The notes under the pieces were generated by a model. It saw nothing but the letters and a program-made list of their open reading frames with translations, had not been told where the DNA came from and ran no database searches. A program made the position numbers and the translations under genes. Below, piece by piece: positions 38,168 through 58,247 of a stretch of DNA of 64,000 nucleotides. Numbering within the stretch: the first letter of the stretch is position 1; every line of letters begins with the position of its first letter. The stretch is taken from the sequence record MG752970.1; one strand, 5' to 3'.

Positions 38168-39212
38168 TTAGTGTATAAGGAATAACGTTTCCGGCTTCGT
38201 CAAGAATAGCAGACATGCTTTTAGATTTTGAAGAAGATGGTGGCTGACTTGCGGTAACCGGTGTTCCAGTTGGATTATTCCAGCTAGCATTTTTGAAAGC
38301 TTCTGAAAATGCGTCAGGCTTATCGGTTGTTGAAAATGGATCTTCAACTGTTTCAACATTGGCGTCATCATCTTCGATCATGATCTCCCAAAGCTTAACG
38401 ATAGATTCCTGAATATCCGGATCATCGAATGTTGATACTGCATAATTTACTGCTTTAAATGCGGGCTCATCATTCAATTTCGTCGCACCAAAAATTTTCA
38501 TCATCTTGGCGGTGAGTATAATTTTGCGAACACTTAGGTACTGACTGATTCCTCCTCCTTCATATGAAGAATAGATGTCAGTAAACCATTTGGCAAGATG
38601 TTTGATTATTTTTGGTTGATCGAACTCAAATTGATCAGCGTGTGATTTTAGAATACTGATAATTTCTTCGGTGGTTGGAACATTGTATTCGATCCACGCC
38701 GCAAATCGATCTCTAAATGCCTTGTTAAGGACGTTGGTTCCAACGTATTCACCACCCGTTTGATCGCCAGTTCCCTTCGTATTTCCGGTGGCTATAATCA
38801 TGAACCCATCTTTAGGTTCAATCACTTCACCGGTTTTCTTGATGGTGTAAGATTTTCCTTCTAGAATCGGTTGAAGTTCCATCAACACAACAGAATCACC
38901 AGCATCAAGTTCATCAAGCACTATGATGTCACCATTCAACATTGCGTTGATTAGTGGACCATACTTAAATTCGGTGTTTCCATTTTCTAGTCGGATGCCA
39001 CCAACCATATCGTCAACTGTTGTTGAAACTGAAACGTTAAATTTGATGGCTTTTCGATTATGCTTCCGGGCGGCTTCTATGATCGCGGTTGTTTTTCCTA
39101 AACCAGTTGGACCATATACGAAAATCGGAATTGAGATAGGAGTGGAGATAAACTGTTCTACTTTAGAAAAGAATTCAGTTTCTATAAATCCACTTGATTT
39201 AGTTGTTGTCAT
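38157..39212 (-). CDS. MoxR/CobS-like AAA+ ATPase
   Basis: GPTGLGKTT, VLDELD, ATGNTKG, AFRDRF. Confidence 0.88.
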   Translation of the reverse strand: MTTTKSSGFIETEFFSKVEQFISTPISIPIFVYGPTGLGKTTAIIEAARKHNRKAIKFNVSVSTTVDDMVGGIRLENGNTEFKYGPLINAMLNGDIIVLDELDAGDSVVLMELQPILEGKSYTIKKTGEVIEPKDGFMIIATGNTKGTGDQTGGEYVGTNVLNKAFRDRFAAWIEYNVPTTEEIISILKSHADQFEFDQPKIIKHLAKWFTDIYSSYEGGGISQYLSVRKIILTAKMMKIFGATKLNDEPAFKAVNYAVSTFDDPDIQESIVKLWEIMIEDDDANVETVEDPFSTTDKPDAFSEAFKNASWNNPTGTPVTASQPPSSSKSKSMSAILDEAGNVIPYTLNDL

Positions 39213-46692: not shown

Positions 46693-47100
46693 TCACTTAG
46701 ATTTTAGCTTTTCGGCTTGTGCGACCATTGCCTCAAATGCATCAAGTGTGGTTTTTTCATGAGGATTAGTAGTCTCACCTCTTAGCGTATCAGTTGTCGA
46801 AATCCCATCAAATCCTGATTTATATTTTGACAGACGATCATGCGCTATCTTTACCAGAAAATCATTAATTTTCGGATCTAGTATTATCGTTTGTAAAACC
46901 TTGAGAAGATCGGCTGGTAAATCACCATGCTTTTTATGACTAAGATACAGGTGGTAAATAGACACAAATCGTTCATGCGAAGTCATACCGTCATCATCAA
47001 CAAGGAACCTCAGTGCTTCGAGGTTCCATGCTTTTGACGTTTTTAGCAATGAGCGTATCTGTTCTTTTGTTAGATACTTAGGTGTTACCGTTGAGCCCAT
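46693..47100 (-). CDS. hypothetical protein
   Basis: ORF track. Confidence 0.5.
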   Translation of the reverse strand: MGSTVTPKYLTKEQIRSLLKTSKAWNLEALRFLVDDDGMTSHERFVSIYHLYLSHKKHGDLPADLLKVLQTIILDPKINDFLVKIAHDRLSKYKSGFDGISTTDTLRGETTNPHEKTTLDAFEAMVAQAEKLKSK

Positions 47101-47662
47101 TGGTAAATATTTCCTTGATGATTCGCAGTGATTCGACTGTGTAGATACAATCTTCCATCGCGTTATGACCTGTTCGTTCTGGGAATCCCATCAATGCAAA
47201 CAAATCGTCCGACTTGTTGATTCCCAGTAAGGCATGCGCAAATGATCTAGTGTCGAATCTTATTGGATGAACCCTGATGTGGATATCGTGGTCTGACAAG
47301 ATTTGCTGGGTGAATGCAATATCAAAATCCACAGAATGTCCAATGAAAATCATTCTCTTATCGGGATTGAAGTATTTCAAAATAAGCTCAGCTAGAGAAA
47401 CTGCGGCAGTTTCGCGATCAACGCCATTTTCCTCAAGATATTCACGGGTCAAACCATGAATAGCTTCAGCTTCTTTTGACCACTTATATTTTGATTCATC
47501 AAATTTGATTTCTAGGTAGAGTGAATCTACAATTTCAAAAGTAGAAATTCTTACAACGGCTGCACCAAATGAAAGACCCTGATATGAGACATGACTGTCT
47601 CCATTAAAATCTGAACCAGATGTTTCCCAATCGATTGCCAATGCAAATTCTGGAGATGTCAT
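47078..47662 (-). CDS. DEDDh 3'-5' exonuclease (DnaQ-like)
   Basis: IDWETSG, GHSVDFD, HNAMED. Confidence 0.85.
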   Translation of the reverse strand: MTSPEFALAIDWETSGSDFNGDSHVSYQGLSFGAAVVRISTFEIVDSLYLEIKFDESKYKWSKEAEAIHGLTREYLEENGVDRETAAVSLAELILKYFNPDKRMIFIGHSVDFDIAFTQQILSDHDIHIRVHPIRFDTRSFAHALLGINKSDDLFALMGFPERTGHNAMEDCIYTVESLRIIKEIFTNGLNGNT

Positions 47663-48583: not shown

Positions 48584-49270
48584 TTACGGCAGATGTTTGA
48601 GAATTGTTTTAATTAGAGGATTGCGCACAACATCATTTTCGTGGAATTGGACAACTTGAATTTCTGATGTCTTTCCTAGAAGAGCGTTGGCTGCCGGTGC
48701 GAAACCTGAATCGCCTGGTTTTGGTAAGTCGATTTGGTTTTCGTCGCCGTTAATGCACATATACGAATTCTCACCAAGACGTGTTGTGATTAGCTTAACA
48801 CCTTTACGTGTAAGATTTTGTGCTTCGTCAACGATGATGAACGCGTCCTGTAGTGTCATACCACGTAGATACGCAGCCGGAATAAATTTGATTTTTCCGG
48901 ATTTAATTAGATCTTCGGTCTTCATTGGACCAATGTGTTGAATGAAGTTTTGACGTAGTGCTTCAAAATATGGTCGTGTTTTTTCGTCAATCTCACCAGG
49001 TAGATAACCTAGCTTTTCATCAGCAGCCTCGATGATAGGTTTTGTGATGATGATTTGCTGAACATCCTTTTCAATTAGATGTTGAAGAGCAATGTAGGTG
49101 GCAATGTAGGTTTTACCGACACCTGCAGGTCCTAAACAAAATGTAATTGTTGCTTCGTTGAGAGTTTGTGCGTAGTATTCCTGTGCTGCAGTTCGGAATT
49201 TGAGAGGTTTAAGGAAGAGGGCGTTTGATTCTTTTGCTGGTGCTGGGTACTTCTGTATTTTCTTCGCCAT
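48584..49270 (-). CDS. phoH: PhoH family ATPase
   Basis: GPAGVGKT, LGYLPG, YLRGMT, IVDEAQN, TRLGE, GDxxQxDL, DVVRNPLI. Start reassigned to MAKKIQK. Confidence 0.93.
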   Translation of the reverse strand: MAKKIQKYPAPAKESNALFLKPLKFRTAAQEYYAQTLNEATITFCLGPAGVGKTYIATYIALQHLIEKDVQQIIITKPIIEAADEKLGYLPGEIDEKTRPYFEALRQNFIQHIGPMKTEDLIKSGKIKFIPAAYLRGMTLQDAFIIVDEAQNLTRKGVKLITTRLGENSYMCINGDENQIDLPKPGDSGFAPAANALLGKTSEIQVVQFHENDVVRNPLIKTILKHLP

Positions 49271-49327
49271 TAAATCAGTCCTACTAAAATGAGATTGAAC
49301 GTATGAATATGTTTTATAGACCGAAAA

Positions 49328-49349
49328 AAGGAGCGTAATTACGCTCCTT
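49328..49349 (-). terminator. rho-independent terminator (perfect palindrome)
   Basis: AAGGAGCGTAATTACGCTCCTT with a T tract on the - strand. Confidence 0.75.
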
Positions 49350-49689
49350 GACCCTCGGTAGCCCACGCAATCCATGCTGCAGCATCCATGGTTGGATTGA
49401 AGCATGTATTCGTTTCTTCAAGCTCATGGATCTTGCCAATGAAGAATTTAGCAACATCCACAATTTCCTTCTTGCTTAGTTCCTTAACGGCGTCAATCAT
49501 TTCCTTAGTTGGATTGTGACCGTCTAGATCAATGCTGAAGGATTTGCTATCCTTAATGAGTTGCATAAGGTTAGCCAGAATATAGACCTCAACTGTAGGA
49601 TCGGTGAGGCCGTCATTCTTTACGATCTTCTGAAGTGTCAGCATGACATGAGGCATGAGAGATTCTGCGAATAGCTCTCTAAACTTCAT
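49339..49689 (-). CDS. putative internal head protein
   Basis: N-terminus MKFRELFAE resembles the T4 capsid-targeting sequence. Confidence 0.5.
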   Translation of the reverse strand: MKFRELFAESLMPHVMLTLQKIVKNDGLTDPTVEVYILANLMQLIKDSKSFSIDLDGHNPTKEMIDAVKELSKKEIVDVAKFFIGKIHELEETNTCFNPTMDAAAWIAWATEGQGA

Positions 49690-50272: not shown

Positions 50273-50280
50273 TATTTATT
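50273..50280 (-). promoter_or_regulatory. T4-like late promoter (AATAAATA)
   Basis: Overlaps the clpP stop; upstream of 50218. Confidence 0.5.
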
Positions 50281-50941
50281 GTTCGTCTGTAGCAGAAACC
50301 TTTGTGGTTTTCTTCTTGGCTACTTTCTTTGCGGCAGGTTTTACGTTATCTGTAGTTCCTTGGCCGCTTTTGTCTACGTAAGTATCCACGATTTTGTCGC
50401 AAAGACCGTATTTTAGACATTCCTTTGGTTCTAACCAGCGATCTGATGGTCCTAGAAGAATATCCTTAACTTGCTTTGCTGTCATATTGGTGTTTCTGGT
50501 ATAGTGCTCGATAAATTGATTTTCGAGAATTTGAACCATTCTATTTCCAGCGATGAGCTCATGTTGCTTACCAAACATACCGGTGGTAAACTGATGGGTC
50601 ATGACAAGGCAATTCTTTGTCATTAGACGCATTCCTCTGGTGCCGGCGATAAAGATGCTAACACCCATAGATGCGATGCATCCGATAGCAACAGTTTGAA
50701 TCTGATGTGGATTTGATTCCATCAAACTGATAATTGCATTTCCATCGTCCACATTGCCACCTGGGCTGTTGATGAACATGGTTAGAATTTCATCTGGATT
50801 GTAGATAAGTGCACTCTTTAGGAGCCAGTGAGATGTCTCATAGGCCGACTGTTCGTCGATTGCACCGTAAAGAAGATGAGTTCCCAGAGAATTAAGACTT
50901 AATGCATCTAGGGATAGGGTTTGTGGAACAGATTCTGCCAT
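50276..50941 (-). CDS. clpP: ClpP serine protease proteolytic subunit
   Basis: INSPGG, CIASMG (catalytic Ser), MTHQ (His), DRWL (Asp), YGLCDKI. Confidence 0.92.
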   Translation of the reverse strand: MAESVPQTLSLDALSLNSLGTHLLYGAIDEQSAYETSHWLLKSALIYNPDEILTMFINSPGGNVDDGNAIISLMESNPHQIQTVAIGCIASMGVSIFIAGTRGMRLMTKNCLVMTHQFTTGMFGKQHELIAGNRMVQILENQFIEHYTRNTNMTAKQVKDILLGPSDRWLEPKECLKYGLCDKIVDTYVDKSGQGTTDNVKPAAKKVAKKKTTKVSATDEQ

Positions 50942-51245: not shown

Positions 51246-51785
51246 TTATTTTCTGAGTAGATTGCAGAAATAAATTCGGCTGTAATTCGATGTTTCATCG
51301 GAACCTATCATCATGATAGGCTTGTTATGATCTCCAGTAACGAAACTTAGTTTAATTTCACCAAGTAAACTGTCTTCTTGATGAACTCTAAACGGATTTC
51401 TTTTACCTTCTGCAATCAAACTATTTGCCTCTTCCTTGAAGATTTCTAATGCTTTAGACATTAGCTGTTTCTTCAGAGAATTTCTAGTATCTTTATCTAA
51501 TGCTCCAGCCAACTTTACAGAAAGGTTTACTGAGCATCGCTTTCCTGATTTATTTATGACGTACTGGGAGTCATCTACTTTTGATGAAAAGAGCATATTT
51601 GGTCTCTTTTCCTTCAGCTCATCGTCTTTTACGTCCTTGACTTGTTTAACTATTGATTGCCATTCTTCCTTGAGGCGTGACTTGATCTTAGAAACGAGCT
51701 CATCATGCTCATCTCTTTCATAGTCTAGGAAACGCAGAGCTTCAGCTGCACGGGCTTTTTCAAATAGAATTTCAGTTACTTTCAT
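51246..51785 (-). CDS. putative internal head protein
   Basis: N-terminus MKVTEILFE; late motif at 51813-51820. Confidence 0.5.
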   Translation of the reverse strand: MKVTEILFEKARAAEALRFLDYERDEHDELVSKIKSRLKEEWQSIVKQVKDVKDDELKEKRPNMLFSSKVDDSQYVINKSGKRCSVNLSVKLAGALDKDTRNSLKKQLMSKALEIFKEEANSLIAEGKRNPFRVHQEDSLLGEIKLSFVTGDHNKPIMMIGSDETSNYSRIYFCNLLRK

Positions 51786-51812
51786 GTTTGACCATGTATA
51801 AGAATCATGGTC

Positions 51813-51820
51813 TATTTATC
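51813..51820 (-). promoter_or_regulatory. T4-like late promoter (GATAAATA)
   Basis: Right after the tmRNA terminator. Confidence 0.6.
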
Positions 51821-51844
51821 ACCATTCTTCTATCCCGGAGCATG

Positions 51845-51869
51845 AAAAAGGGTAGATTGCTCTACCCTT
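51845..51869 (-). terminator. rho-independent terminator closing the tmRNA gene
   Basis: On the - strand: AAGGGTAGA-GCAA-TCTACCCTTTTT. Confidence 0.85.
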
Positions 51870-52120
51870 CTGTCAACTATTCTGTTGCTAAGTCAGTGAC
51901 CAACTCCAGCAGACCTTTAGCTCAGGCTGCTACGGCGTAACGTGAATCGTTAGCGTTTAGTTTAATTTGCTTTTAACGTCTACTCCTGACGATAATCTCC
52001 AGCTTCGTACTTGTCTGCCAATCGATACCATGACCACCCCATGAAAATTAAATGGGTGGAGTGGGCGGGAGTCGAACCCGCGTCTTGTTCAGCTTTTCTG
52101 TTGCTATCAACGACTATTCT
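51870..52120 (-). ncRNA. ssrA: circularly permuted (two-piece) tmRNA
   Basis: Acceptor piece comes first: T-arm GCGGG-TTCGACT-CCCGC (52081-52065), then CCACTCC-A (52064-52057). A 16-nt spacer follows. The coding piece starts GGGGTGG at 52040, giving a 7-bp acceptor stem with a G3.U70 pair. Tag ORF 51954-51922 = ANDSRYAVAA*. Outer ends are approximate. Confidence 0.92.
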
Positions 52121-52375
52121 TTACTTAAGCAGAAAATCAAAGTAATACGAATTGATCGCATCCTTTAATTTTCGCTTTGCAAATAACGCATTGCCATTAC
52201 TTCCAACTACCTGGAATTTACCATCTCTGGCCTTAGACAGCCATAATGTTTTGGCAATGTCAATTGGCTGAGGAACGTTTGTTTGCGTAACCTCATAGAT
52301 GGCTGCAACTACCTCACCTTCTTCCAACTTTTCAGAGGCGAATATCGATAGTGCAGCTGATAGTGTAGAATTCAT
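52121..52375 (-). CDS. hypothetical protein
   Basis: ORF immediately upstream of the tmRNA. Confidence 0.5.
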   Translation of the reverse strand: MNSTLSAALSIFASEKLEEGEVVAAIYEVTQTNVPQPIDIAKTLWLSKARDGKFQVVGSNGNALFAKRKLKDAINSYYFDFLLK

Positions 52376-52697: not shown

Positions 52698-53201
52698 TCA
52701 GGGAAGCTTCCAAAGAACCTTTTCGATGCTATTGTCAATTTCATCATCGATGATTTTCTCGATGATGTTCCAATCCCCATTGGCCAACCCGGCGCCAATA
52801 AGTGGGAAGTTGAGAACCTTGTCGTAAACGACTTCTGGGAATTCGGTGTTCCAATTCAAAATCATTTTGTTGATTTTCTTGAAACATTTTCGTAGACCAT
52901 CATAGTCGACATATACGACATTCTTGTCTGCACCATAAAATTCCTGGGTGATCGCGTTGAACACAATTCCCCATGAATCAGAAAGTTCCACAGAAATTAC
53001 ATCGCCAACTTTCAAGCCTTGAAGCAAATATGCTCGCCGGTAGTCCTTCCACACCGTTGGATATTCTCGACGGAATTCACCGGCGATGCCGCGGCCCATT
53101 GCTCCTTGCGCATTGCAGCCGTGAACGTAGAATTCCCGTCGACCGTATAGATCATTTTCGGCAATGGCTTCTACCATATTGCCGTATACGGTATGAATCA
53201 T
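52698..53201 (-). CDS. macro domain protein (ADP-ribose processing, TARG1/DarG-like)
   Basis: VHGCNAQGAMGRGIA...FPLIGAGLANGDW. Confidence 0.88.
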   Translation of the reverse strand: MIHTVYGNMVEAIAENDLYGRREFYVHGCNAQGAMGRGIAGEFRREYPTVWKDYRRAYLLQGLKVGDVISVELSDSWGIVFNAITQEFYGADKNVVYVDYDGLRKCFKKINKMILNWNTEFPEVVYDKVLNFPLIGAGLANGDWNIIEKIIDDEIDNSIEKVLWKLP

Positions 53202-54497: not shown

Positions 54498-55427
54498 TCA
54501 AACTGCGATCGGGAAATCAATCTTAGGAAGTGCCTCATATCCTAAAAGTTCAAAATCATCAACTACGTAATCGTAGATGGATTCTCTAGGATTCAGTTTT
54601 AGGATTGGGGAATCTGGTGCTTCTTCTCTAGAGAGATACTCATTGGTGGCATCGAACGCATTCTTGTAGACGTGACAGTGTGATGCGCTATGATACACGG
54701 TCTTTGGATTGAATCCACATTGCTGGGCGATCATGTACGTAAACAGTGTGGCAGTCCAAATGTTACCCATACCGACACCTATAGGATAATCGGCTGATCT
54801 CTGGAACAAGTGGCAACTCAGATCTTTCATTTCTCCATTTTCGTCCGGAGAGACGATAAATGAATAGAATGCATGACACGCCGGAAGAATCGCCATGTGG
54901 TTGGTGTCGGGTCTCCAGAATGTGAAGCATGCCTGTCTAGATTTAGGATTAGTCTTCAGGGTGTTGATTACGTAATCTAACTGATTGAAGCCACATTTTC
55001 CTTTTGCTGCAGAATAGAATGGGTTCCCAGATTCCATTTCTTTAGCATGATCAACAGTGTGGATATCCGCGCCAAAATGAATTAGATTGAAACCGTATAC
55101 GTATCCGGCTGATCCTTGTGGCAGATCATGTTTCTCTGTGAATTCGTCATTTTTCCATGGAGTCCATATTTTAGCACCCATGGCTTCTAGATCATTGATG
55201 CTATGACTGCCAGAAATATACCACAAAACTTCCTTGACGATGGATTTCCATGCTACCTTACGTTTAGTAAGAACAGGAACGCGTTCGCTGATATCATACT
55301 TGGTGCTGAGACCGAACAGAGCTCTAGTACCATGCCCTGTTCTATCTCCATCAATGTCGAAGCCCTCATTCATAATTCGAGCGAGGGCTTCGTCGTACTC
55401 ATACATCGTATATTTGGAATTCTTCAT
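54498..55427 (-). CDS. thyA: thymidylate synthase
   Basis: DRTGHGT, EVLWYISG, LPACH (catalytic Cys), QRSAD, HVYKN. Confidence 0.92.
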   Translation of the reverse strand: MKNSKYTMYEYDEALARIMNEGFDIDGDRTGHGTRALFGLSTKYDISERVPVLTKRKVAWKSIVKEVLWYISGSHSINDLEAMGAKIWTPWKNDEFTEKHDLPQGSAGYVYGFNLIHFGADIHTVDHAKEMESGNPFYSAAKGKCGFNQLDYVINTLKTNPKSRQACFTFWRPDTNHMAILPACHAFYSFIVSPDENGEMKDLSCHLFQRSADYPIGVGMGNIWTATLFTYMIAQQCGFNPKTVYHSASHCHVYKNAFDATNEYLSREEAPDSPILKLNPRESIYDYVVDDFELLGYEALPKIDFPIAV

Positions 55428-56996: not shown

Positions 56997-57159
56997 CTGC
57001 TATCCAGCATAAAACTATTGCAACGATCGTGTAGGCTAGTCCGAAAAAAGTGTACATGCATACATTTGCACCAAAGAAAAAATAAATGCCCGCAAACAGT
57101 AAGCAGGGTACCCCTAGCACTAAAAATCCGACTAAAAACTTTTTAATAAAATCCATCAT
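56944..57159 (-). CDS. small membrane protein
   Basis: Two hydrophobic helices and a basic tail. Confidence 0.5.
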   Translation of the reverse strand: MMDFIKKFLVGFLVLGVPCLLFAGIYFFFGANVCMYTFFGLAYTIVAIVLCWIAGESILEEIHARRRRKSR

Positions 57160-58247
57160 ATTTGCTCCAATGAATATTGTTCCTTCAACATGTGGGCTCT
57201 GAAATATCCCACATAATCAGGATCCTTTCCCCTAAACACTGACATGATTAATCCAAAGAATCTATGCCCTTGGAACTTTAATGCAACATCCTTAGGAGTC
57301 ATTCCGGAGGTCTGAGCCACAGCTTCCTCAACATCTCTACGGATTTCACCGATTGTTGCAACAACACGCTTTTCAATTTGTTCGATTTTGGTTAAATCGA
57401 CGCCAATCTTCATGAGCGGTTCTTTCACGTCATCCAGAGTTTCATCTAGAATCATTTCGGCAATATCACGCTCACGAATGAACACGATAGTCCTGTGCAG
57501 CTTCACGTACCAATCGGTCTTCACCTTTACCATGTCGCCATCAGCGAACTGAAAAATGGCACCTTCAATATCTTCCTTGTCCTTCAACGTAGACAAAAAG
57601 TGCAGAGGCTCACCTATTAGAACATTCTGTACTATAGGAATTTGGTAATAGTTCGCAAATCCTTCTAGCTTGTCCATACACCAATATTCACCGGTGACGT
57701 TGTTACGTACATGCAGCAGCGTCATTTGCTCTGAATCATATGGCAGAACAATTCTATTATCTGGAGCCGTGTACTCAAAAGTTGGTGTAAATCCCATCTC
57801 ACCAATCCATTGAGCAAATGCCGTGAAGTTCGAATTTGCATCTAAAAACTTTTGAGCCTTCACGGCAACATCAGATGAAAACGACTTCTTCGATTTAGCC
57901 AGCACGCCACCATTCAAAACCATGGTGCTAATCATGGACCCATCTAGTTTATCCATCACGCGCCCCACTTTCTCCCATTCTAAATTTTCCTGACGCGCGA
58001 AATCATTTTCGTTCAGGTTGAAAAATTTGTGGAGGCTTCTTGAAATTACATTTCCTTCTGGACCAAAAGTGATGCCACGGCATTCTCTAGCCCATGGATT
58101 ATCAAATGTTGAAGCTGTGGCAATGGAATAGCACACGATTGTTGTTCCATTTGCTTGCTTGGTAACATTGATTTCCGGCTTGTCTTGGATTTTTGAAACC
58201 AAATCATCCAAGTGGGTAATTATAGGGAACGACATAGCATGCTCCAA
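57156..58247 (-). CDS. rnlA: RNA ligase 1 (T4 Rnl1-like)
   Basis: ECRG...HKFFN, MDKLDGS, FEY...NRIV, EGAIF, KVKTDWY. Confidence 0.9.
   Translation of the reverse strand: MEHAMSFPIITHLDDLVSKIQDKPEINVTKQANGTTIVCYSIATASTFDNPWARECRGITFGPEGNVISRSLHKFFNLNENDFARQENLEWEKVGRVMDKLDGSMISTMVLNGGVLAKSKKSFSSDVAVKAQKFLDANSNFTAFAQWIGEMGFTPTFEYTAPDNRIVLPYDSEQMTLLHVRNNVTGEYWCMDKLEGFANYYQIPIVQNVLIGEPLHFLSTLKDKEDIEGAIFQFADGDMVKVKTDWYVKLHRTIVFIRERDIAEMILDETLDDVKEPLMKIGVDLTKIEQIEKRVVATIGEIRRDVEEAVAQTSGMTPKDVALKFQGHRFFGLIMSVFRGKDPDYVGYFRAHMLKEQYSLEQI

What the first reader, a model, noticed from the sequence alone, without database searches (positions are those of the whole stretch)
51870..52120. Phage-encoded circularly permuted (two-piece) tmRNA
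Seen on the - strand: the 3' tRNA-like part comes first (T-arm GCGGG-TTCGACT-CCCGC, CCACTCC, discriminator A at 52057, CCA not encoded). A 16-nt AT-rich spacer follows, then the 5' part GGGGTGG (52040). These pair as a 7-bp acceptor stem with the AlaRS determinant G3.U70. The resume context TAAAC-GCT precedes tag ANDSRYAVAA* (51954-51922), then a terminator. Known: permuted tmRNA genes are characteristic of alphaproteobacteria, some marine cyanobacteria and a small betaproteobacterial lineage. The phage tmRNAs I know of are mostly one-piece. The gene is also compact (about 250 nt), implying loss of most pseudoknots. Inference: an independent permutation or capture in a phage, providing ribosome rescue when host tmRNA/tRNA/mRNA is cut by defence nucleases.
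Basis: partly seen in the sequence, partly recalled or inferred. Interest (0 to 1): 0.87.

Follow-up and report, generated by a model that had tools for sequence, protein, structure and literature searches.

The report
Unannotated two-piece tmRNA gene in phage
The Ralstonia jumbo phage RsoM2USA carries a real but unannotated circularly permuted (two-piece) tmRNA gene; it belongs to a permuted tmRNA type already common in large phages, so it is a sound annotation, not a new kind of element.

Summary
The window is the right-hand 64 kb of Ralstonia phage RsoM2USA (MG752970). On the minus strand, 52117-51846 matches Rfam tmRNA_permuted (96.7 bits, cut-off 47) and beta_tmRNA (92 bits, cut-off 84). 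ARAGORN also calls a permuted tmRNA.

- T-arm, and a 7-bp acceptor stem with G3:U70.
- Discriminator A at 52057, followed by CCC instead of CCA.
- A 16-nt intervening sequence.
- Tag ANDSRYAVAA* at 51954-51922, and a terminator hairpin.

Permuted tmRNAs are already known in phages: 53 of 133 unique phage tmRNAs, including the sister phage XacN1. This gene belongs to a beta-type permuted family that I found in BUCT-ZZ01, XacN1 and dozens of IMG/VR viral contigs. An independent permutation is therefore unlikely. The anti-defence role is untested.

RsoM2USA-specific features:
- CCA is not encoded.
- The intervening sequence lacks the helix its relatives have.
- An 18-nt direct repeat links the two ends of the gene.

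Noticed in passing: a ClpP-family protease gene lies 0.9 kb downstream. The same tmRNA-ClpP arrangement recurs in four other viral lineages.

Verdict: new member of a known kind, modest interest.

The parts
51846..52117 (-). Whole permuted tmRNA (ssrA) gene, order: acceptor piece, intervening sequence, coding piece, terminator
   Evidence: Rfam RF04321 covers 52117-51922 at 96.7 bits. RF01850 covers 52154-51843 at 92 bits. ARAGORN calls tmRNA*.
52057..52117 (-). Acceptor piece (the 3' half of the tRNA-like domain). It holds the P2c 5' strand 52117-52113, P2a 5' strands 52092-52085, T-arm 52081-52065, 3' acceptor strand 52064-52058 and discriminator A 52057.
   Evidence: The T-arm and acceptor stem covary across relatives, as does P2a. 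The true 5' end is not known.
52041..52056 (-). Intervening sequence of 16 nt. It starts with CCC where relatives encode CCA, and it is too short to form the helix that relatives' intervening sequences form.
   Evidence: The conserved helix in relatives' intervening sequences shows up in the alignment fold.
52022..52040 (-). 5' acceptor strand (52040-52034) and the D-loop analogue (52033-52022). The predicted RNase P cut is 5' of G52040.
   Evidence: The G:U at the third acceptor pair is present in all 20 aligned sequences.
51977..52021 (-). 3' strands of the P2 helices (52021-52015 and on to about 51992) and a small hairpin at 51991-51977 just upstream of the tag
   Evidence: Rfam alignment. 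The hairpin shows compensatory changes. A run starting at this hairpin, up to the resume codon, is nearly identical to BUCT-ZZ01.
51922..51959 (-). Resume context (51959-51955) and tag reading frame 51954-51922, coding ANDSRYAVAA plus a UGA stop
   Evidence: Relatives' tags are of the same type, for example ANDSVYALAA, ANDERFALAA and one ending in AVAA.
51872..51921 (-). 3' domain. It has a hairpin (stem 51900-51894 with 51879-51872, loop 51893-51880) and two upstream stretches (51921-51917 and 51910-51906). Either stretch could pair with the loop to make the single pseudoknot.
   Evidence: Hairpin position comes from the RF01850 alignment and the alignment with close relatives. The pseudoknot pairing is read by eye and by homology. 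It is not tested statistically.
51843..51869 (-). Intrinsic-terminator-like hairpin (9-bp arms, 4-nt loop) followed by a run of U
   Evidence: (I2). The consensus scan did not list it, probably because two U of the tail are counted into the stem.
52089..52106 (-). Upstream copy of an 18-nt direct repeat, 16 of 18 identical to 51890-51873
   Evidence: This repeat is unique to RsoM2USA among about 46 distinct permuted tmRNAs.
51873..51890 (-). Downstream copy of the 18-nt direct repeat, inside the loop and 3' strand of the 3' hairpin
50276..50941 (-). ClpP-family serine protease gene (ORF465). It is a possible functional partner of the tag and is not part of the RNA gene.
   Evidence: PF00574 at E 2e-30. 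PDB ClpP chains match at E 5e-18. Ser, His and Asp are invariant in five phage homologues. The linkage to tmRNA recurs in other viral lineages.

Best explanation
This is a genuine two-piece (circularly permuted) tmRNA gene of the beta type, carried by the lytic jumbo phage RsoM2USA.

Shown:
- The sequence and secondary-structure signature of the family.
- The permuted gene order.
- An intact alanine identity set: G3:U70 and discriminator A.
- An intact 10-codon tag frame ending in two alanines.
- A terminator.
- Membership of a clade of such genes that is widespread in large phages.

Inferred:
- The gene is transcribed with, or just after, the upstream minus-strand genes.
- RNase P cuts 5' of G52040.
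- The 3' end of the acceptor piece is trimmed to the discriminator (or to ACC) and completed by the host CCA-adding enzyme.
- The two pieces stay together through the acceptor and P2 helices.
- The RNA is charged by host AlaRS and delivered by host SmpB and EF-Tu to ribosomes stalled on broken or stop-less mRNAs.
- It frees those ribosomes and adds the tag, which marks the truncated product for Clp-type proteolysis, possibly by the phage's own ClpP.

For a phage with a 4.5-h latent period, 44 tRNAs, an amber suppressor tRNA and a Pth2 hydrolase, this would keep the translation apparatus available during infection.
For: Family membership:
- Rfam scores are above the curated cut-offs for two models, and ARAGORN agrees.
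- In 20 aligned relatives, acceptor pairs 4-6 change on both sides in 8-12 sequences with none broken, and the G:U is invariant (see also for about 30 distinct sequences).
- P2a covaries across 41 distinct sequences.
- The hairpin before the tag, and P2c, show compensatory changes.

Tag:
- The tag frame is homologous to relatives' AND...AA tags.
- The 30 or so bases upstream of the resume codon are almost identical to BUCT-ZZ01 and are shared with 18 IMG/VR contigs, while the tags differ. This argues for constraint.

Genome context:
- The phage's translation-related gene set includes 44 tRNAs and a suppressor tRNA (PMC8504454).
- It also has Pth2 and a GatB/YqeY-domain protein.
- A ClpP gene with an intact triad lies 0.9 kb downstream, and this linkage recurs in four other viral lineages.
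Against: - There are no expression, processing, charging or tagging data.
- CCA is not encoded, unlike almost all relatives.
- One base of the otherwise near-invariant D-loop analogue differs (GGUAUCGA instead of GGUUUCGA).
- The outer P2 helices are weak. A two-strand fold prefers a different pairing between the 5' leader and the 3' domain.
- Its RF01850 score is the lowest among the relatives examined.
- No sigma-70-like promoter lies upstream.
- No SmpB is reported for the phage, so it depends on host SmpB accepting it.
- No close relative exists to show purifying selection on the RsoM2USA-specific features.
Confidence: 0.72

Rival explanations
1. Decaying relic. The gene was inherited from a T4-like ancestor and is no longer functional in this phage.
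For: - CCA is lost.
- The D-loop analogue carries a unique substitution.
- The helix in the intervening sequence is lost.
- P2b and P2c are weak.
- It has the lowest family score among relatives.
- An odd internal repeat suggests a rearrangement.
- It sits away from the tRNA genes, unlike in XacN1.
Against: - The acceptor stem, G:U, T-arm, P2a, resume context, 10-codon frame, stop and terminator are all intact.
- Phage tRNA-like genes without encoded CCA are matured by host enzymes in other systems. This is established for T4 tRNAs and rests on my own knowledge.
- Other family members also lack CCA (L044, L045, L053).
Confidence: 0.12
2. Modulator rather than helper. The phage RNA competes with host tmRNA for SmpB and stalled ribosomes. 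It either changes the fate of tagged proteins (a tag with different protease preference) or blunts host trans-translation.
For: - The tag ends in AVAA rather than the ALAA of most relatives.
- A CDS-less phage tmRNA-like RNA has been reported to inhibit endogenous tmRNA (cited in PMC11915505).
- The survey paper raises selective tagging of host proteins as a possibility (PMC9004378).
Against: - The tag is of the ordinary proteolysis type with the terminal Ala-Ala.
- A ClpP gene is linked to it.
- Nothing in the sequence indicates loss of the coding function.
Confidence: 0.08
3. The main role is counter-defence, that is, ribosome rescue when host nucleases cut tRNA, mRNA or host tmRNA.
For: All circumstantial:
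- A T4 Rnl1-type RNA ligase lies 5 kb upstream.
- A Macro-domain protein lies 0.6 kb upstream.
- A second RNA ligase and a Thg1 lie elsewhere in the genome (PMC8504454).
Against: - No defence system, target or cleavage is identified.
- tmRNA cannot replace cleaved tRNAs.
- The same gene type occurs in many phages of unrelated hosts, which fits a general housekeeping role.
Confidence: 0.07
4. A fragment of host ssrA picked up through integration or excision (an att-site remnant), or a chance tRNA-like fold.
For: Fragments of ssrA are common in temperate phages.
Against: - The match is full length to permuted models.
- The phage is lytic, and G+C is 46% against about 67% in the host.
- No Ralstonia appears among bacterial hits to the junction pattern.
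- The nearest relatives are viral.
Confidence: 0.01

Closest known systems
Beta-type two-piece tmRNA (Rfam RF01850), described for a betaproteobacterial lineage such as Rhodocyclaceae
   Same: - Gene order.
- The tRNA-like domain.
- A single small hairpin in place of the first pseudoknot.
- An AND...AA tag.
- One hairpin or pseudoknot domain after the tag.

The score is above the family cut-off over the full model.
   Different: - It scores only 92 bits. A Rhodocyclaceae genome scores 285 and Advenella 163-167.
- It is A+T-rich.
- Its intervening sequence is 16 nt and has no helix.
- CCA is not encoded.
- It is carried by a phage whose host genus did not appear among the permuted hits.
Permuted tmRNA of Synechococcus phage BUCT-ZZ01 (ON615601) and the IMG/VR clade sharing the hairpin motif upstream of the tag (L055-L072)
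   Same: - It is the closest DNA relative, at about 80% identity over the core stretches.
- The hairpin and the spacer before the resume codon are almost identical.
- It is also beta type by Rfam.
- BUCT-ZZ01 also holds the closest ClpP homologue among isolated phages.
   Different: - Relatives have intervening sequences of 71-199 nt, encode CCA and carry other tags.
- Their outer P2 helices are stronger.
- They lack the terminal repeat.
Permuted tmRNA of Xanthomonas phage XacN1, the sister phage of RsoM2USA
   Same: It is permuted and beta type at 107.8 bits. It is already catalogued as permuted in PMC9004378, Table S1.
   Different: - Only about 49% identical over aligned columns.
- A 114-nt intervening sequence and the tag ANANTFDYALAA.
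- It lies inside the tRNA cluster next to a GOLLD RNA.
- It is not syntenic with the RsoM2USA gene.
Alpha-type two-piece tmRNAs of marine phages (Melnitz, pelagimyophages) and of Alphaproteobacteria
   Same: They are phage-borne permuted tmRNAs proposed to maintain the hijacked translation machinery (PMC9004378).
   Different: - They belong to a different Rfam subtype.
- Some are riboswitch-controlled.
- They come from marine hosts.
One-piece tmRNAs of actinobacteriophages and huge phages
   Same: They have the same presumed function. Huge phages often combine tmRNA with other translation genes (PMC7162821; annotated examples).
   Different: They have the standard, unpermuted gene form. Some huge phages also bring their own SmpB.

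Membership tests
tmRNA, permuted (two-piece) form | Score above the curated cut-off of the family covariance model | tested here: met
   RF04321 scores 96.7 bits against 47, over model positions 1-213.
tmRNA, permuted (two-piece) form | Acceptor stem formed by two distant strands, with G:U at the third pair and discriminator A (alanine identity) | tested here: met
   Seven pairs, with G:U at pair 3 and A at 52057. Covariation is seen at pairs 4-6 in relatives, with none broken.
tmRNA, permuted (two-piece) form | T-arm with the tRNA-type T-loop, a D-loop analogue, and no anticodon arm | tested here: met
   T-arm at 52081-52065 and D-loop analogue at 52033-52022, with one unusual base.
tmRNA, permuted (two-piece) form | Gene order: the 3' tRNA-like half, then an intervening sequence, then the 5' tRNA-like half plus the tag frame | tested here: met
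tmRNA, permuted (two-piece) form | Short tag reading frame that starts at an Ala resume codon without a start codon and ends in hydrophobic residues plus Ala-Ala | tested here: met
   The frame at 51954-51922 aligns to the tag region of both models. Its translation was verified.
tmRNA, permuted (two-piece) form | Encoded CCA after the discriminator (usual, but not obligatory) | tested here: not met
   The gene has CCC. The database paper states that this position does not always encode CCA (PMC11915505). L044, L045 and L053 also lack it. It is therefore not disqualifying.
tmRNA, permuted (two-piece) form | P2 helices joining the two pieces | tested here: inconclusive
   The inner P2a helices are present and covary. 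The outer helices are weak or shifted in RsoM2USA, and an alternative pairing is predicted.
tmRNA, permuted (two-piece) form | Processing into two RNAs, charging with alanine, SmpB binding, and tagging of stalled products | not testable with these tools
   No expression or biochemical data are available for this phage.
Beta-type subfamily (RF01850) | Score above the cut-off over the full model, including the 3' domain | tested here: met
   92 bits against 84, over model positions 1-331. This is marginal, and several outer pairs are non-canonical.
Beta-type subfamily (RF01850) | A pseudoknot in the domain after the tag | tested here: inconclusive
   The hairpin is present. Two candidate upstream strands are complementary to its loop. 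No statistical test was made.
Host-derived ssrA copy | Close similarity to the host's own tmRNA gene | not tested
Indirect evidence is the absence of Ralstonia among junction-pattern hits and a G+C of 46% against about 67%. That Ralstonia uses the standard one-piece form rests on my own knowledge.

The most novel reading that the evidence does not exclude
The phage tmRNA and the ClpP-family protease gene just downstream form a virus-borne tag-and-degrade module. The module recurs in several unrelated large-phage lineages. More broadly, the beta-type two-piece tmRNA may be mainly a viral lineage that moves between phages of very different hosts (cyanobacteria, Xanthomonas, Ralstonia) and may have seeded the scattered bacterial carriers.
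Probability: 0.2. Interest if true: 0.55.

Novelty: new member of a known kind. Interest (0 to 1): 0.3.

Why it matters
- It corrects the annotation of a published biocontrol-candidate phage. Neither the GenBank record nor the genome paper lists a tmRNA.
- It adds a soil, non-aquatic example to the permuted phage tmRNAs, which a survey found to be almost all marine or aquatic.
- It shows that phages of hosts as different as Synechococcus, Xanthomonas and Ralstonia carry the same beta-type form. This bears on how the patchy bacterial distribution of two-piece tmRNA arose.
- The recurrent tmRNA-ClpP neighbourhood gives a concrete lead on what phage tmRNAs are for. It can be checked by survey.

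Tried and rejected
Rejected or unproductive:
- ARAGORN's tag call (DRRVEQSTLFHAPG) was rejected. It lies in the terminator hairpin and disagrees with both Rfam alignments.
- The sigma-70 promoter scan found nothing upstream on the minus strand. The terminator scan missed the evident hairpin.

Searches for a close relative all found nothing:
- A 32-mer shared with BUCT-ZZ01 in IMG/VR.
- An RsoM2USA-specific 18-mer in IMG/VR.
- Two patterns in JGI metagenomes.
- tblastn with the flanking ORFs against phages, which returned only the phage itself.

Steps that could not be done:
- The paper describing the betaproteobacterial two-piece lineage is not held.
- Papers on Ralstonia or Cupriavidus ssrA did not state the gene form.
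- I did not run the count of structure pairs with a hand-written structure, because that needs a very long typed string. I used the alignment fold and scripts instead.

Ideas checked and dropped:
- ORF157 as an ArfB-type rescue factor: it is a Pth2 hydrolase.
- ORF465 as the head maturation protease: the phage has a separate prohead protease next to the capsid genes.

None was entered into a tool, used as evidence or written in this report.

Full report
**What the window is**

Bases 51700-52300 are 100% identical to Ralstonia phage RsoM2USA (MG752970.1) at positions 331506-332106. The window is therefore the last 64 kb of this 343,806-bp lytic jumbo myovirus. The GenBank record shows only hypothetical proteins here and no RNA feature. 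The genome paper reports 44 tRNAs, including an amber suppressor, but never mentions tmRNA, ssrA or SmpB (PMC8504454).

**Check of the observation**

ARAGORN finds one gene in the whole window, a permuted tmRNA at 51739-52147 on the minus strand. Rfam finds two matches above the curated cut-offs:
- tmRNA_permuted RF04321 at 52117-51922: 96.7 bits against 47, E 1.5e-17.
- beta_tmRNA RF01850 at 52154-51843: 92 bits against 84, E 1.6e-26.

- T-arm at 52081-52065.
- 3' acceptor strand at 52064-52058, and discriminator A at 52057.
- CCC rather than CCA after the discriminator.
- A 16-nt A+T-rich intervening sequence at 52056-52041.
- 5' acceptor strand at 52040-52034, giving seven pairs with G:U at the third.
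- The tag frame at 51954-51922, which translates to ANDSRYAVAA and a stop.
- A 9-bp hairpin followed by a run of U at 51869-51843.

ARAGORN's own tag call lies in the terminator.

**Structure and covariation**

I collected relatives by pattern scans and from named phages.
- In about 30 distinct sequences, acceptor positions 4-7 differ freely yet always pair, and the G:U is constant.
- RNAalifold on 20 sequences shows both-sides changes at acceptor pairs 4-6 in 8-12 sequences with none broken. It also shows compensatory changes in the T-arm, in P2c and in the small hairpin before the tag.
- The two inner P2a helices covary across 41 distinct sequences. RsoM2USA fits if one extra bulged base is allowed.
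- In RsoM2USA the outer P2 helices are weak. A two-strand fold of the predicted mature pieces prefers a 12-bp helix between the 5' leader (52115-52103) and the 3' domain (51904-51891).
- After the tag there is one hairpin, homologous to that of relatives. Its loop can pair with either of two upstream stretches, which gives at most one pseudoknot. I did not test that pairing statistically.

Small size and few pseudoknots are properties of the whole beta-type family, not a peculiarity of this gene.

**Relatives**

The best DNA match in the phage collection is Synechococcus phage BUCT-ZZ01, at about 80% identity over the core. Its gene is also permuted and scores as beta_tmRNA (94.5 bits), with a 114-nt intervening sequence and the tag ANDETFSMALAA.

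The sister phage XacN1 has a permuted, beta-type tmRNA (107.8 bits, tag ANANTFDYALAA) inside its tRNA cluster. It is only about 49% identical to the RsoM2USA gene over aligned columns and is not syntenic with it.

Viral contigs:
- A junction pattern found 32 IMG/VR contigs. Nearly all are beta type, at 100-197 bits.
- The hairpin motif shared by RsoM2USA and BUCT-ZZ01 found 18 more. All those tested are beta type, with tags such as ANDERFALAA, and they often lie beside large tRNA arrays.

Bacterial genomes:
- The same junction pattern found only 18 loci in 185,579 bacterial species genomes: Advenella, one Rhodocyclaceae, Acidobacteriaceae and Acetobacteraceae MAGs, and no Ralstonia.
- None of these is closer to RsoM2USA than the viral sequences.
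- That pattern was tuned to the phage sequence, so the viral-to-bacterial ratio is biased.

No close relative of the RsoM2USA gene exists in IMG/VR or the JGI metagenomes.

**What is known already**

- Three gene forms of tmRNA are recognised, and the permuted form has its own Rfam model (PMC11915505).
- A survey of 18,146 phage genomes found 133 unique tmRNAs. Of these, 53 were permuted, and 50 of the 53 came from marine or aquatic phages. Its table lists XacN1 as permuted (PMC9004378).
- Huge phages often carry tmRNA and sometimes SmpB (PMC7162821).

The class is therefore known. This instance is unannotated, comes from soil, and is a divergent member.

**What is particular to RsoM2USA**

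1. CCA is replaced by CCC. Among the sequences compared, only three others lack CCA.
2. The D-loop analogue reads GGUAUCGA where the beta-type relatives have GGUUUCGA. A group of alpha-like viral tmRNAs shares the A.
3. Relatives' intervening sequences form a covarying helix next to the acceptor stem. The 16-nt RsoM2USA spacer cannot form it.
4. An 18-nt direct repeat (16 of 18 identical) links 52106-52089, just 5' of P2a and the T-arm, with 51890-51873, in the 3' hairpin.
   - Its exact 11-mer occurs nowhere else in the window, where 0.05 occurrences are expected.
   - None of about 46 other permuted tmRNAs has such a repeat.
   - The two copies sit at the positions that would be one segment in an unpermuted ancestor.
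   - This may be a trace of a secondary duplication or gene conversion, or it may support alternative pairing. I could not decide between these.
   - It is the only hint of a rearrangement in this lineage. It does not outweigh the shared architecture with all relatives.

**Surroundings**

All neighbouring genes are on the minus strand.
- Upstream: a T4 Rnl1-type RNA ligase (57156-58247), a MazG-like protein, thymidylate synthase (54498-55427), a Macro-domain protein (52698-53201) and two small ORFs of unknown function.
- Downstream: two ORFs of unknown function, a ClpP-family protease (50276-50941), PhoH (48584-49405) and a DEDDh exonuclease.

The ClpP:
- It matches PF00574 (E 2e-30) and solved ClpP structures (E 5e-18), and it keeps invariant Ser, His and Asp.
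- The phage has a separate prohead protease beside its capsid genes.
- A ClpP homologue lies 0.3-1.7 kb downstream, on the same strand as the permuted tmRNA, in four other distinct viral lineages: L004/L014/L017, L021/L029/L032, L034 and L067/L068.
- Three of these have the order tmRNA, cell-wall hydrolase, ClpP among T4-like replication genes.
- Most other viral loci, and all 18 bacterial loci, lack it.
- The closest ClpP among isolated phages is again in BUCT-ZZ01, though not adjacent to its tmRNA.

Elsewhere the phage encodes a Pth2 peptidyl-tRNA hydrolase and a GatB/YqeY-domain protein.

**How it most likely works**

Shown: the family signature, the permuted order, the alanine identity elements, an intact tag frame and a terminator.

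Inferred, from the established trans-translation pathway and from how two-piece tmRNAs mature in bacteria:
- RNase P cuts at G52040.
- The 3' end is trimmed and CCA is completed by host enzymes.
- The two pieces associate through the acceptor and P2 helices.
- The RNA is charged by AlaRS and delivered by host SmpB and EF-Tu.
- Stalled ribosomes are released, and products are tagged for Clp-type proteolysis.

The linked ClpP makes the proteolysis step more plausible. A phage-encoded amber suppressor would increase read-through to mRNA ends and so increase the need for rescue. This last link rests on my own knowledge of suppressor effects in E. coli, and on amber-suppressor tRNAs lying within about 1 kb of the tmRNA in BUCT-ZZ01, XacN1, L009 and L024.

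Rival explanations are:
- a decaying relic;
- a competitor of host tmRNA;
- a dedicated counter-defence role;
- a host-derived fragment, which is effectively excluded.

**Verdict**

The interpretation overstates novelty. The gene is a new, divergent and unannotated member of a known kind of phage gene. The tmRNA-ClpP neighbourhood and the terminal repeat are the points worth a follow-up survey.

Noticed in passing
window 50276-50941 (-); L017 6515-7327; L029 2237-2836; L034 9724-10296; L068 8905-9465: A ClpP-family protease gene with a conserved Ser-His-Asp lies 0.3-1.7 kb downstream of the permuted tmRNA, on the same strand. This holds in RsoM2USA and in four other distinct viral lineages. 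Three of them share the order tmRNA, cell-wall hydrolase, ClpP. The closest ClpP among isolated phages is in BUCT-ZZ01, which also has the closest tmRNA.
   Followed up: partly
window 52089-52106 and 51873-51890 (-), weaker copy 52113-52129: An 18-nt direct repeat (16 of 18 identical) joins the two ends of the permuted gene. It is unique among about 46 permuted tmRNAs. It could be a vestige of duplication, gene conversion, or a basis for alternative pairing.
   Followed up: partly
window 57156-58247 (-), 52698-53201 (-), 47078-47662 (-): A T4 Rnl1-type RNA ligase, a Macro-domain protein (its PHROG family is annotated as phosphatase) and a DEDDh/RNase T-like exonuclease lie within 5 kb of the tmRNA. 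Together they suggest an RNA repair or maturation neighbourhood.
   Followed up: no
MG752970 103221-104122 (L054 3222-4123, -): ORF157 is a Pth2-type peptidyl-tRNA hydrolase (PF01981, E 2e-32). The adjacent ORF156 is a GatB/YqeY-domain protein. Both are labelled hypothetical in GenBank.
   Followed up: partly
L003 (XacN1) 38570-38983 (+): A GOLLD RNA (RF02032, 227 bits against a cut-off of 150) lies 1 kb downstream of the XacN1 tmRNA, in a stretch with no annotated feature.
   Followed up: no
L002 4345-4420; L003 36047-36205; L009 4617-4690; L024 3421-3496: Amber-suppressor tRNAs (anticodon CUA, which ARAGORN labels Pyl) lie within about 1 kb of the permuted tmRNA in several phages. RsoM2USA also encodes one, elsewhere in its genome.
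   Followed up: no
L038, L042, L043, L045, L046, L048, L053 (Acidobacteriaceae MAGs); L036-L041, L047 (Advenella): Permuted tmRNA genes occur in Acidobacteriaceae MAGs, where only the general permuted model matches (76-89 bits). They also occur in Advenella (beta type, 163-167 bits). Both lie outside the three classical lineages as usually stated.
   Followed up: no
alignment A2, columns 150-158 with 253-261: In relatives the intervening sequence forms a covarying 9-bp helix stacked next to the acceptor stem, perhaps a processing signal. RsoM2USA lacks it.
   Followed up: partly
window 51739-52147 (-): ARAGORN recognises the gene but places the tag in the terminator hairpin. An annotation pipeline that relies on it would report a wrong tag peptide.
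   Followed up: yes
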